Shown one piece after another: positions 10,152 to 34,444 of a stretch of 56,131 bases of DNA (position 1 is the stretch's first letter; the number at the start of each line of letters is the position of its first letter). The notes beneath the pieces were generated by a model. It saw only the letters and a list, made by a program, of their open reading frames with translations, made no database searches and was not told the DNA's origin. Made by a program: the position numbers and the translations under genes. Source of the DNA: Octopus bimaculoides. Taxonomy: Eukaryota. The DNA is taken from NCBI RefSeq assembly GCF_001194135.2, contig NC_068984.1, positions 145,179,876 through 145,236,006 on the forward strand, in the 5' to 3' direction.

Positions 10152-34444
<24,293 letters not shown>

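What the first reader, a model, noticed from the sequence alone, without database searches (positions are those of the whole stretch)
27206..27235. Alpha/beta hydrolase with Glu in the nucleophile slot (G-S-E-L-S)
After the beta5 strand FILV, the elbow reads G-S-E198-L-S instead of G-x-S-x-G, or G-x-D-x-G as in epoxide hydrolases and haloalkane dehalogenases. The oxyanion loop is DAPTG rather than HG. Candidate acid D337 (ISGNMYD) and His373/374 (GVDHH) remain and the ORF is intact. It could be a pseudoenzyme or ligand receptor, a rare Glu-nucleophile hydrolase, or use the shifted Ser197. Residues are seen directly; triad assignment is by motif position; function is inference.
Basis: partly seen in the sequence, partly recalled or inferred. 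Interest (0 to 1): 0.7.

Follow-up and report, generated by a model that had tools for sequence, protein, structure and literature searches.

The report
Octopus hydrolase-fold protein with remodelled active site
An intact, conserved octopus gene encodes a membrane-anchored protein built like a hydrolase enzyme, but every part of its ancestral catalytic machinery has been replaced (the key serine by glutamate), so it most likely binds something rather than cutting it, and nobody has studied the family.

Summary
Window 27215-27229 encodes G196-S197-E198-L199-S200 in exon 7 of a 12-exon gene (10152-34444, + strand). My spliced 400-aa product is identical to Octopus bimaculoides XP_014783573.1, an uncharacterised protein. 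An AlphaFold2 model places E198 exactly at the strand-turn-helix nucleophile elbow.

The Glu is a family trait, not an error: Glu in 111 and Asp in 5 of 117 animal orthologues (cnidarians to fishes), GAA in a cephalopod transcript, dN/dS about 0.1.

The closest sequence relatives are bacterial membrane-anchored hydrolases with a canonical G-H-S-x-G-G elbow, a His after beta8 and an Asp after beta6. In the animal family all catalytic elements changed:
- Ser to Glu at 198.
- Oxyanion-loop Gly to Pro at 111.
- Triad His to Arg, His or Lys at 373; only 52 of 117 keep any His in that loop.
- Triad Asp to Asp or Asn at 222 (Asn in octopus).

Ser197 is Ala in 43% of orthologues. D337 lies in a family-specific insertion. 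Lamprey has Gln and an octocoral has Gly at 198.

Conserved N-glycosylation sequons and the charge flanking the anchor indicate a type II membrane glycoprotein.

Best reading: a conserved pseudo-hydrolase or binding module, analogous to DPP6. A Glu-based neo-enzyme is not excluded. Interest is moderate.

The parts
10152..10262 (+). Coding exon 1 (M1-N37): cytosolic N-terminal tail, Arg-rich start and His-rich stretch
Evidence: ATG to a GTAAGC donor. The whole model is identical to XP_014783573.1.
19652..19787 (+). Coding exon 2, including the predicted signal-anchor/TM helix (residues 45-67 = 19673-19741) and M77 (the start of predicted isoform X2)
   Evidence: tblastn to homologues. Kyte-Doolittle maximum is 1.63 over residues 45-63. 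The AF2 model has a helix at 45-78. Flank charge is +2.15 on the N side and -1.43 on the C side across the family.
21923..21991 (+). Coding exon 3 (beta1-beta2; invariant C98 at 21967-21969)
23480..23556 (+). Coding exon 4 with the oxyanion loop D109-A110-P111-T112-G113 (23488-23502; P111 = 23494-23496)
   Evidence: P111 is Pro in 116 of 117 family members but Gly in 82 of 104 sisters. It aligns with the X of H-G-X in solved esterases and Cif.
24682..24732 (+). Coding exon 5 (beta4; invariant C133, D136, R137)
25425..25498 (+). Coding exon 6 (low-confidence loop; N149-F-T151 sequon at 25425-25433)
   Evidence: Found by a splice- and frame-constrained search. The sequon is present in 98 of 117 family members, against 2 of 84 sisters with a sequon anywhere in that loop.
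27148..27267 (+). Coding exon 7: helix B, strand beta5 and the nucleophile elbow G196-S197-E198-L199-S200 (27215-27229; E198 = GAA at 27221-27223)
   Evidence: Strand 192-197 and helix 199-210 in the AF2 model. Glu in 111, Asp in 5, Gln in 1 of 117.
27666..27746 (+). Coding exon 8: strand beta6 and N222 (27691-27693), the ancestral triad-acid slot
   Evidence: Position 222 is Asp in 87 and Glu in 6 of 104 sisters, and Asp 60 / Asn 52 in the family. It aligns with Cif Glu153.
28591..28729 (+). Coding exon 9: cap-domain helices
30645..30727 (+). Coding exon 10: most conserved cap block, P-x-H295-L-S-S-x-V-D301-E302-H303-x-F-x-N307-E-S309-x-x-Q312 (H295 = 30669-30671; N307-S309 sequon = 30705-30713)
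   Evidence: H295, E302, N307 and Q312 are invariant in 117. The N307-x-[ST] sequon is present in 117 of 117 family members against 3-5 of 84 sisters.
31150..31246 (+). Coding exon 11: strand beta7 and the family-specific loop with D337 (31217-31219)
   Evidence: D337 is Asp in 115 of 117. The column is a gap in 77 of 104 sister-set sequences.
34280..34444 (+). Coding exon 12 (stop codon included): strand beta8, the former His loop D372-H373-H374 (34355-34363) and the C-terminal helix
   Evidence: Position 373 aligns with the catalytic His of S-G-H in sisters. In the family it is Arg 75, His 21, Lys 10.

Best explanation
LOC106878763 encodes a single-pass type II membrane glycoprotein: cytosolic N-terminus, anchor at about residues 45-67, and a lumenal or extracellular C-terminal domain. 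That domain is an alpha/beta-hydrolase fold inherited from bacterial-type, membrane-anchored Ser-His-Asp hydrolases.

In the animal lineage every element of the ancestral catalytic apparatus was rebuilt:
- Nucleophile Ser to Glu (198).
- The preceding His to Ser or Ala (197).
- The oxyanion-loop Gly to Pro (111). Pro has no backbone NH to donate.
- The triad His to a basic residue that is usually Arg (373).
- The post-beta6 triad Asp was relaxed to Asp or Asn (222; Asn in octopus).

Canonical covalent catalysis is therefore very unlikely. I infer that the conserved Glu carboxylate forms a buried polar or ionic network with the basic residue at 373 and the conserved D337 and D372. This network would either stabilise the former active site or form the charged floor of a ligand pocket under the large helical cap (residues 232-319, containing invariant H295, E302 and Q312). 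The protein would then act as a binding, scaffolding or regulatory module in the secretory pathway or at the cell surface, not as a hydrolase.

Shown: the residues, fold, homology, direction of change, conservation, purifying selection and topology proxies. Inferred: the ion pair, the absence of activity and the binding role.
For: - **Gene and residues:**
- **Fold and elbow placement:** AF2 pLDDT 89.6, strand 192-197 and helix 199-210. Foldseek probability 1.0 to alpha/beta-hydrolases. Pfam PF00561 above its cutoff.
- **Family-wide conservation**: E198 is Glu 111 / Asp 5 / Gln 1. S197 is Ser 66 / Ala 50. P111 is Pro in 116 of 117. Position 373 is Arg 75 / His 21 / Lys 10. D337 is Asp in 115.
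- **Sister group:** an exhaustive profile search finds 320-360 aa proteins. They carry G-H-S-x-G-G (Ser 86 of 104), His at 373 (88 of 104), Asp or Glu at 222 (93 of 104) and D-A-G. They occur in many bacterial phyla (576 loci).
- **Column equivalences:** hhalign, family against sister, probability 100% and E 7e-62.
- **Anchoring to solved enzymes:** D-A-G aligns with H-G-F. The elbow Ser aligns with the esterase Ser and with Cif residue 129. Position 222 aligns with Cif Glu153. S-G-H aligns with A-G-H.
- **His loss:** only 52 of 117 members have any His at 373 or 374.
- **Natural substitutions at 198:** Gln in lamprey, Gly in the octocoral Dendronephthya.
- **Purifying selection:** dN/dS 0.06-0.16 against a cephalopod transcript that also has GAA.
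- **Topology:** N307-x-S/T in 117 of 117 family members against 3-5 of 84 sisters. N149 sequon in 98 of 117, against 2 of 84 sisters with a sequon anywhere in that loop. Flank charge +2.15 / -1.43.
- **Precedent:** DPP6 (Ser to Asp) and DPP10 (Ser to Gly) are inactive, glycosylated type II alpha/beta-hydrolase-fold proteins (PMC4350108).
Against: - Glu198 is more strictly conserved (95% Glu, 99% acidic in the core set) than 'dead' catalytic positions usually are. It is surrounded by conserved D109, D337 and D372, which could indicate a new chemistry.
- Octopus and about 44% of members do have Glu, a His in the loop and D337. That is formally an acid-His-acid arrangement like that of Asp-nucleophile dehalogenases, and those are the best structural matches.
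- I could not obtain model coordinates. The E198-373 contact, pocket volume and cap geometry are unmeasured.
- The 198-373 co-variation is weak (Fisher p = 0.056, uncorrected for phylogeny).
- No ligand, partner, localisation or expression data exist. The only paper naming the fish orthologue mentions it incidentally.
- Topology rests on sequence proxies only, and the anchor hydropathy is marginal (1.63).
Confidence: 0.6

Rival explanations
1. Neo-enzyme using a carboxylate. E198 would act as nucleophile (as Asp does in epoxide hydrolases and haloalkane or fluoroacetate dehalogenases) or as general base. It would be assisted by H373 or H374 and D337 in lineages that keep a His, such as octopus, or by another base such as invariant cap residue H295.
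For: - E198 is acidic in 116 of 117 members. D337 is Asp in 115 of 117 and D372 in 106 of 117.
- Octopus has E198, H373/H374 and D337 together, and 52 of 117 members have this combination.
- The best structural matches are all Asp-nucleophile enzymes: haloalkane dehalogenase III, Cif, Cfl1 and fluoroacetate dehalogenase.
- Strong purifying selection.
Against: - The His slot is Arg in 64% of members. All listed teleosts (D-R-R), rotifers (D-K-Y) and cnidarian-type sequences lack any His in the loop.
- P111 removes one backbone NH of the oxyanion hole, and Pro is present in 116 of 117.
- The ancestral acid slot 222 is Asn in octopus and in 45% of the family.
- Natural Gln (lamprey, one goby) and Gly (octocoral) occur at 198.
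- The residue after the nucleophile is Leu, not the Trp of dehalogenases.
- The H-G-x-P motif is absent.
- Ancestry is from Ser hydrolases.
Confidence: 0.2
2. Cation or metal-binding site. The cluster of conserved carboxylates (D109, E198, D337, D372) with His373/374 in octopus would bind Ca2+, Zn2+ or a cationic (amine or choline) head group, making the protein a sensor or carrier. This is a specific sub-case of the binding-module reading.
For: Four conserved acidic residues occupy loops that converge on the active site in this fold. Octopus adds two adjacent His residues.
Against: - The His residues are not conserved, and Arg or Lys at 373 would compete with a cation.
- No coordinates were available to test the geometry.
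- No known metal-site motif is present.
Confidence: 0.12
3. Ser197, shifted by one position, serves as the nucleophile of a conventional serine hydrolase.
For: A Ser precedes the Glu in octopus.
Against: - Position 197 is Ala in 50 of 117 orthologues. It corresponds to the His of G-H-S-x-G-G in the sister group, not to the nucleophile.
- DSSP places 197 at the end of the strand and 198 at the turn.
Confidence: 0.02
4. Artefact: sequencing or assembly error, private mutation, or decaying pseudogene.
For: The window has 14 N gaps and many microsatellites.
Against: - The same codon appears in the chromosome-level assembly.
- Glu is present in O. vulgaris/sinensis and in a decapodiform transcript (GAA). 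Argonauta belongs to the same 90%-identity protein cluster.
- All 12 exons are intact with GT-AG junctions.
- dN/dS is about 0.1.
- Glu or Asp is present in 116 of 117 orthologues across phyla.
Confidence: 0.01

Closest known systems
DPP6 (DPPX) and DPP10 (DPPY), inactive members of the S9B dipeptidyl-peptidase family
   Same: Both are glycosylated single-pass type II membrane proteins whose extracellular alpha/beta-hydrolase domain has lost the nucleophile Ser. DPP6 has Asp and DPP10 has Gly (PMC4350108). That mirrors the Glu, Asp, Gly and Gln states seen in this family. They are conserved under selection and act by binding (Kv4 channel auxiliary subunits), not by catalysis.
   Different: There is no detectable sequence relationship beyond the superfamily fold. 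DPP6 and DPP10 have a large beta-propeller domain and keep the triad His and Asp. The octopus family has no propeller, has a helical cap instead, and has also remodelled the His, acid and oxyanion positions. This is an analogy of kind, not membership.
Bacterial membrane-anchored Ser hydrolases of the 'D-A-G / G-H-S-x-G-G / S-G-H' type (uncharacterised; NCBI labels some animal family members 'YbdG-like' or 'YqjL-like')
   Same: These are the closest sequence relatives (120-156 bits to the family profile; hhalign probability 100%, E 7e-62). They share the N-terminal hydrophobic helix, domain length, cap, the conserved Cys pair (C98, C133), the Y-D-R-A-G motif, E302 and Q312, and an acidic residue instead of His before the oxyanion loop.
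   Different: They retain the full Ser-His-Asp triad and a Gly at position 111. They lack the N-glycosylation sequons and the D337 insertion. They are bacterial and are themselves uncharacterised, with no NCBIfam model above its cutoff.
Asp-nucleophile alpha/beta-hydrolases: Cif and Cfl epoxide hydrolases, fluoroacetate dehalogenase, haloalkane dehalogenases
   Same: These are the best structural matches (Foldseek E about 1e-13, target-normalised TM 0.65-0.74). They have a carboxylate side chain at the elbow, and the triad acid after beta6 in Cif (E153) corresponds to family position 222.
   Different: - Glu, not Asp.
- No H-G-x-P motif (D-A-P-T instead).
- No Trp after the nucleophile.
- The His is not conserved.
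- Position 222 is Asn in octopus.
- Only 14-18% identity.
- The family's nearest sequence relatives have Ser, so the carboxylate arose independently.
Other non-catalytic alpha/beta-hydrolase-fold proteins (neuroligins, ABHD5/CGI-58, NDRG proteins); from general knowledge, not tested here
   Same: The fold is retained under selection with the nucleophile Ser substituted, and they function through protein or ligand binding.
   Different: They belong to different subfamilies with different substitutions (Gly or Asn) and mostly different topology. None is known to me with a conserved Glu at the elbow.

Membership tests
Alpha/beta-hydrolase fold superfamily (Pfam Abhydrolase_1, PF00561) | Profile match above Pfam's gathering threshold | tested here: met
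   PF00561 scores 30.5 bits against a 25.8 cutoff, E 3.7e-07, covering residues 114-351.
Alpha/beta-hydrolase fold superfamily (Pfam Abhydrolase_1, PF00561) | Central sheet with strand-turn-helix 'nucleophile elbow' after beta5, and a cap inserted after beta6 | tested here: met
   AF2 DSSP gives strands 105-109, 131-135, 192-197, 215-221, 327-333 and 364-368, helix 199-210, and cap helices 232-319. Foldseek probability is 1.0 to many solved alpha/beta-hydrolases.
Canonical Ser-His-Asp alpha/beta-hydrolases | Nucleophile Ser in Sm-x-Ser-x-Sm | tested here: not met
   Glu at 198 in octopus and in 111 of 117 orthologues. The neighbouring Ser197 is not conserved.
Canonical Ser-His-Asp alpha/beta-hydrolases | Catalytic His in the loop after beta8 | tested here: inconclusive
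   Octopus has H373 at the aligned slot. Across the family the slot is Arg 75, His 21, Lys 10, and 65 of 117 members have no His at 373 or 374.
Canonical Ser-His-Asp alpha/beta-hydrolases | Triad acid at the ancestral position of this clade (after beta6) | tested here: not met
   N222 in octopus. The column is Asp or Glu in 93 of 104 sisters and aligns with Cif E153.
Canonical Ser-His-Asp alpha/beta-hydrolases | Oxyanion-hole backbone NH from the residue following H-G | tested here: not met
   The aligned residue is P111, Pro in 116 of 117 family members and Gly in 82 of 104 sisters. Proline has no amide NH (established chemistry). The geometry itself was not measured.
Asp-nucleophile epoxide hydrolases / haloalkane and fluoroacetate dehalogenases | Asp at the elbow | tested here: not met
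   Glu in octopus. Asp occurs in only 5 of 117 members, the rotifers.
Asp-nucleophile epoxide hydrolases / haloalkane and fluoroacetate dehalogenases | H-G-x-P oxyanion motif | tested here: not met
   D-A-P-T-G at the aligned position.
Asp-nucleophile epoxide hydrolases / haloalkane and fluoroacetate dehalogenases | Trp immediately after the nucleophile (dehalogenases), or a pair of ring-opening Tyr/His residues in the cap (epoxide hydrolases) | tested here: inconclusive
   The residue after the nucleophile is Leu199 (Leu, Ile or Met in all 117), so the dehalogenase feature is not met. Cap Tyr or His equivalents could not be assigned without coordinates.
Asp-nucleophile epoxide hydrolases / haloalkane and fluoroacetate dehalogenases | Curated family model above its cutoff | tested here: not met
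   NCBIfam haloalkane dehalogenase NF002938 scores 20.1 bits against a 241 cutoff.
DPP6/DPP10-type inactive S9B peptidase homologues | Type II membrane glycoprotein with a nucleophile-less alpha/beta-hydrolase ectodomain | tested here: met
   Met by sequence proxies only: N-terminal anchor, positive-inside charge, and conserved sequons N307 (117 of 117) and N149 (98 of 117). The nucleophile Ser is absent.
DPP6/DPP10-type inactive S9B peptidase homologues | Eight-bladed beta-propeller domain and S9 peptidase homology | tested here: not met
   There is no propeller. The whole ectodomain is one alpha/beta-hydrolase domain with a helical cap, and only Abhydrolase Pfam families match. The protein is therefore analogous to this family, not a member.

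The most novel reading that the evidence does not exclude
The family is a genuine enzyme that uses Glu198 as a carboxylate nucleophile or general base on an alpha/beta-hydrolase scaffold. That chemistry would have evolved independently of the Asp-nucleophile epoxide hydrolases and dehalogenases, from a Ser hydrolase ancestor. It would act in the secretory pathway or at the cell surface of non-tetrapod animals, with the base supplied by H373/H374 in invertebrates and by another residue, such as invariant cap H295, in fishes.
Probability: 0.15. Interest if true: 0.8.

Novelty: new variant of a known kind. Interest (0 to 1): 0.45.

Why it matters
If the main reading holds, this is an undescribed, ancient family of membrane-anchored pseudo-hydrolases, spanning cnidarians to fishes. 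A bacterial-type Ser-His-Asp site was systematically rewired (Ser to Glu, Gly to Pro, His to Arg, Asp to Asn) and then frozen under purifying selection.

That makes it a clean natural case study of how an enzyme active site becomes a binding site. The extant bacterial sister group preserves the ancestral state, which permits ancestral reconstruction and 'resurrection' mutants.

It would also add an orphan candidate receptor, chaperone or regulatory subunit to the secretory pathway or cell surface. A zebrafish orthologue (si:dkey-122a22.2) is available for genetics.

If the minority reading holds, it would be, to my knowledge, the first natural Glu-nucleophile alpha/beta-hydrolase, which would interest enzymologists and protein engineers.

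Practically, automatic labels such as 'acylglycerol lipase' and 'ABHD14A' attached to some members are probably wrong.

Tried and rejected
- I used alignment A1 of returned orthologues instead.
- **No geometry.** Model coordinates are not exposed. I could not measure E198-373-337 distances, pocket volume or the C98-C133 distance. All 3D statements rest on DSSP, fold matches and alignment transitivity.
- **Family profile against PDB sequences.** Nothing at E <= 1e-5. The sister profile worked.
- **First Pfam scan.** A scan of a four-exon concatenate gave only noise.
- **Spurious His-tag hits.** The single-sequence PDB search was contaminated by hits to the H-rich tail at residues 24-36.
- **Co-variation of 198 (acidic) with 373 (basic).** Counts were 111/11 against 6/3, Fisher p = 0.056, not corrected for phylogeny. 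Too weak to claim.
- **H-x4-D acyltransferase motif (as argued for ABHD5).** The conserved H295...D301 spacing is H-x5-D, so I rejected it (from the sequence).
- **Curated families.** NCBIfam gives no model near its cutoff for the octopus, fish or sister proteins.
- **Literature.** There is no paper on the family. The one paper naming si:dkey-122a22.2 lists it only as an incidentally up-regulated gene. A search for Glu at the nucleophile elbow or for pseudoenzymes found no precedent apart from the DPP10 paper.
- **RNA scans.** Rfam and tRNA scans found nothing bearing on the gene.
- **Rejected readings.** Shifted-Ser, sequencing-error and pseudogene readings were rejected (see rivals).
- **Not established.** Absence of the family from tetrapods, insects and nematodes. 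None appear among the 120 listed hits or the 10 looked-up clusters, but I did not test this directly.
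Full report
**What is in the window**

The window is eukaryotic: 35% G+C, 14 N gaps and abundant microsatellites. The flagged 30 bases (27206-27235, + strand) translate to [10 protein letters not shown]. They lie in a 120-nt exon bounded by a polypyrimidine-AG acceptor and a GTAAGT donor.

I rebuilt the gene in three steps. tblastn with homologues located most exons. A splice- and frame-constrained search found the missing small exon at 25425-25498. A search for the ATG exon found 10152-10262.

The result is a 12-exon, all GT-AG, 1203-nt CDS spanning 10152-34444 and encoding 400 aa. 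The product is identical, residue for residue, to XP_014783573.1 / UniProt A0A0L8G7Z9, 'uncharacterized protein LOC106878763 isoform X1 [Octopus bimaculoides]'. The gene span is identical to chromosome assembly GCA_001194135.2.

**Is E198 really in the nucleophile slot?**

Pfam Abhydrolase_1 matches above its threshold (30.5 against 25.8 bits). I made an AlphaFold2 model of the 98%-identical O. vulgaris orthologue using a 117-sequence alignment. It has mean pLDDT 89.6 and pTM 0.84. DSSP gives strand 192-197 followed directly by helix 199-210, so residue 198 is the turn residue of the strand-turn-helix elbow.

Other elements in the model:
- D109 ends strand beta3.
- Residue 222 follows beta6.
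- A helical cap spans 232-319.
- D337 follows beta7.
- Residues 369-374 form the loop after beta8.

Foldseek against the PDB gives probability 1.0 to many alpha/beta-hydrolases. The top matches are haloalkane dehalogenase subfamily III (8ooh), the epoxide hydrolases Cif and Cfl1, and fluoroacetate dehalogenase, at E about 1e-13, target-normalised TM 0.65-0.74 and 14-18% identity.

**Is the Glu an error or a private change?**

No. A search with the full protein found 323 homologues. They form an uncharacterised metazoan family covering cephalopods, bivalves, gastropods, a chiton, a brachiopod, a nemertean, echinoderms, hemichordates, amphioxus, sea anemones, rotifers and many fishes (the zebrafish gene is si:dkey-122a22.2). 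Further searches added lamprey, scorpion, spiders and an octocoral.

Occupancy in a 117-sequence alignment:

| Position | Occupancy |
|---|---|
| G196 | invariant |
| 197 | Ser 66, Ala 50 |
| 198 | Glu 111, Asp 5 (rotifers), Gln 1 |
| 200 | Gly 114, Ser 3 (the listed cephalopods O. vulgaris and a second species among them) |
| D109-A-P-T-G113 | nearly invariant |
| D337 | Asp 115 |
| D372 | Asp 106 |
| 373 | Arg 75, His 21, Lys 10, Gln 4 |
| 374 | His 47, Arg 44 |

Only 52 of 117 members have a His at either 373 or 374. Teleosts read D-R-R, rotifers D-K-Y, and cnidarian-type sequences have neither Asp nor His there.

A 1.9-kb transcriptome contig from another cephalopod carries the uninterrupted CDS with GAA in G-S-E-L-S. 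dN/dS against the octopus CDS is 0.06-0.16; dS is near saturation, so this is approximate. The gene is therefore expressed in cephalopods and under purifying selection.

**Where did the site come from?**

An exhaustive HMMER search with the family profile gave family-level scores above about 190 bits. Below that is a broad shelf at 120-156 bits of 320-360-aa proteins that match almost the whole profile, including an N-terminal hydrophobic helix. These proteins carry a canonical serine-hydrolase signature:

| Feature | Sister-set count (of 104) |
|---|---|
| Ser at 198, in L-V-G-H-S-[LF]-G-G | 86 |
| His at 197 | 83 |
| His at 373, in S-G-H | 88 |
| Asp or Glu at 222, in L-V-L-V-D after beta6 | 93 |

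They already have D/E-A/S-G where most hydrolases have H-G-x. A pattern scan of prokaryotic genomes found at least 576 loci in many bacterial phyla: Dependentiae, Chlamydiae, Acidobacteriota, Cyanobacteria, Chloroflexota, Nitrospira, Bacillaceae and others.

Profile-profile alignment of family against sister has probability 100% and E 7e-62. It pairs s-E-L-G-A with H-S-x-G-G, D-A-P-T-G with d-a-G-x-G, I-n-P with V-D-s, and a-D-r-h with S-g-H-x.

The sister profile in turn aligns to solved enzymes:
- d-a-G aligns with H-G-F.
- The elbow Ser aligns with the esterase Ser.
- S-g-H aligns with A-G-H.

I used the Cif D129S chain as a ruler. The Ser is at chain index 105, which is residue 129, giving an offset of 24. 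On that ruler the sister Asp after beta6 aligns with Cif Glu153. Glu153 is the target of the E153Q and E153D mutant entries, and it is Cif's charge-relay acid according to the literature (my own knowledge).

By transitivity:
- E198 is the former nucleophile Ser.
- P111 is the former oxyanion-hole residue.
- Position 373 is the former catalytic His.
- Position 222, which is Asn in octopus, is the former triad acid.

**Interpretation**

All four elements of the ancestral machinery changed in the animal family:
- Ser to Glu.
- Gly to Pro at the oxyanion position. Pro has no amide NH.
- His to mostly Arg.
- Asp relaxed to Asp 60 / Asn 52.

More divergent members tolerate Gln at 198 (lamprey; also one goby) or Gly (octocoral Dendronephthya and some unnamed sequences). 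This is the signature of a pseudoenzyme. Even so, the new residues (E198, P111, D337, D372 and a basic residue at 373) are themselves conserved, which argues for a new structural or binding role and not for decay.

The ancestral Ser and His are in hydrogen-bond contact in this fold. I therefore infer that Glu198 pairs with the basic residue at 373. The statistical support is weak (Fisher p = 0.056, uncorrected), and the contact could not be measured.

**Topology**

The N-terminal tail is basic and the segment at residues 45-67 is hydrophobic (KD 1.63). Across the family the net charge is +2.15 before the helix and -1.43 after it.

Two N-x-[ST] sequons are conserved while the middle residue varies:
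- N307 is present in 117 of 117 family members, against 3-5 of 84 bacterial sisters.
- N149 is present in 98 of 117, against 2 of 84 sisters with a sequon anywhere in that loop.

This indicates a type II membrane glycoprotein with a lumenal or extracellular alpha/beta domain. C98 and C133 are invariant and lie on strands that are neighbours in this fold. A disulfide is possible but untested.

**Comparison with known systems**

The best functional analogy is DPP6/DPP10. These are glycosylated type II membrane proteins whose alpha/beta-hydrolase domain has Asp (DPP6) or Gly (DPP10) in place of the catalytic Ser. They are inactive and act as Kv4-channel subunits (PMC4350108). The octopus family is not a member of that family, because it has no beta-propeller and no S9 homology.

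It is also not a member of the epoxide hydrolase or dehalogenase families:
- It has Glu, not Asp.
- It has no H-G-x-P motif.
- Leu, not Trp, follows the nucleophile.
- The NCBIfam haloalkane dehalogenase model scores 20 bits against a 241 cutoff.

No curated family claims it. No paper describes it. Automatic names such as 'acylglycerol lipase' or 'ABHD14A' on some members are unsupported.

**Verdict**

Readings and my probabilities:
- Pseudo-hydrolase or binding module derived from a bacterial-type Ser hydrolase: about 0.6 (best supported).
- Glu-based neo-enzyme: about 0.15-0.2. It is not excluded, mainly because octopus and about 44% of members retain a Glu/His/Asp set, and because the Glu is so strongly conserved.
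- Shifted-Ser and artefact readings: rejected.

Novelty is a new variant of a known kind, namely a non-catalytic alpha/beta-hydrolase-fold protein with an acidic residue in the nucleophile slot. Interest is moderate (0.45).

Noticed in passing
window 17817-18236 (- strand), inside intron 1: A fragment of about 420 nt matches eukaryotic LSU rRNA (Rfam RF02543, model positions 967-1381 of 3401, 106 bits, E 2e-24). It lies next to an N gap (18412-18660). It is probably an rRNA-derived insertion or pseudogene, or an assembly oddity.
   Followed up: no
window ~13731-14330 (- strand), inside intron 1, abutting N gap 14330-14880: An ORF fragment carries reverse-transcriptase motifs (…[13 protein letters not shown]…, …IFADDAKL…). 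It looks like a non-LTR retrotransposon remnant.
   Followed up: no
window 48283-48675 (+) and 42409-42837 (-): Downstream of the gene there is a 130-aa ORF resembling the N-terminal helix-turn-helix region of a transposase, and a 142-aa ORF resembling the C-terminal part of a LINE reverse transcriptase. Both appear to be transposon debris, and neither was checked against profiles. No second cellular gene was recognised in the window.
   Followed up: no
window ~26470-26860, 28797-28995, 29266-29540, 17154-17246, 3393-3520, 15620-15700 (both strands): Multiple copies of a short interspersed repeat give recurring ORF fragments such as 'LGRASSCRN…', 'RLQSDLA…' and '[13 protein letters not shown]'. 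This looks like a SINE-like element abundant in the introns.
   Followed up: no
window 10221-10259 (residues 24-36 of exon 1): The cytosolic tail has a His-rich run, [13 protein letters not shown]. It differs in O. vulgaris (…PQHPHHHQQ…) and is absent from the decapodiform transcript. It produced spurious matches to His-tagged PDB chains.
   Followed up: partly
window 19769-19771 (M77): The predicted isoform X2 (XP_014783574.1, 324 aa) corresponds exactly in length to initiation at M77. It would lack the membrane anchor and so any route into the secretory pathway. Whether it is real is unknown.
   Followed up: partly
loci L001-L080 (bacterial genomes), proteins P0171-P0274: There is a large, apparently uncharacterised bacterial family of N-terminally anchored Ser hydrolases, with at least 576 loci in many phyla. 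Its members have D/E-A/S-G instead of H-G before the oxyanion loop, a conserved Cys pair, Y-D-R-A-G, and the triad acid after beta6. No NCBIfam model is above its cutoff. Its gene neighbourhoods were fetched but not examined.
   Followed up: partly
proteins P0010-P0063: Several family members carry automatic names that imply activity: 'acylglycerol lipase' in UniRef, and 'alpha/beta hydrolase domain-containing protein 14A', 'YbdG-like' and 'YQJL-like' in NCBI. Given the remodelled catalytic site, these labels are probably misleading.
   Followed up: partly
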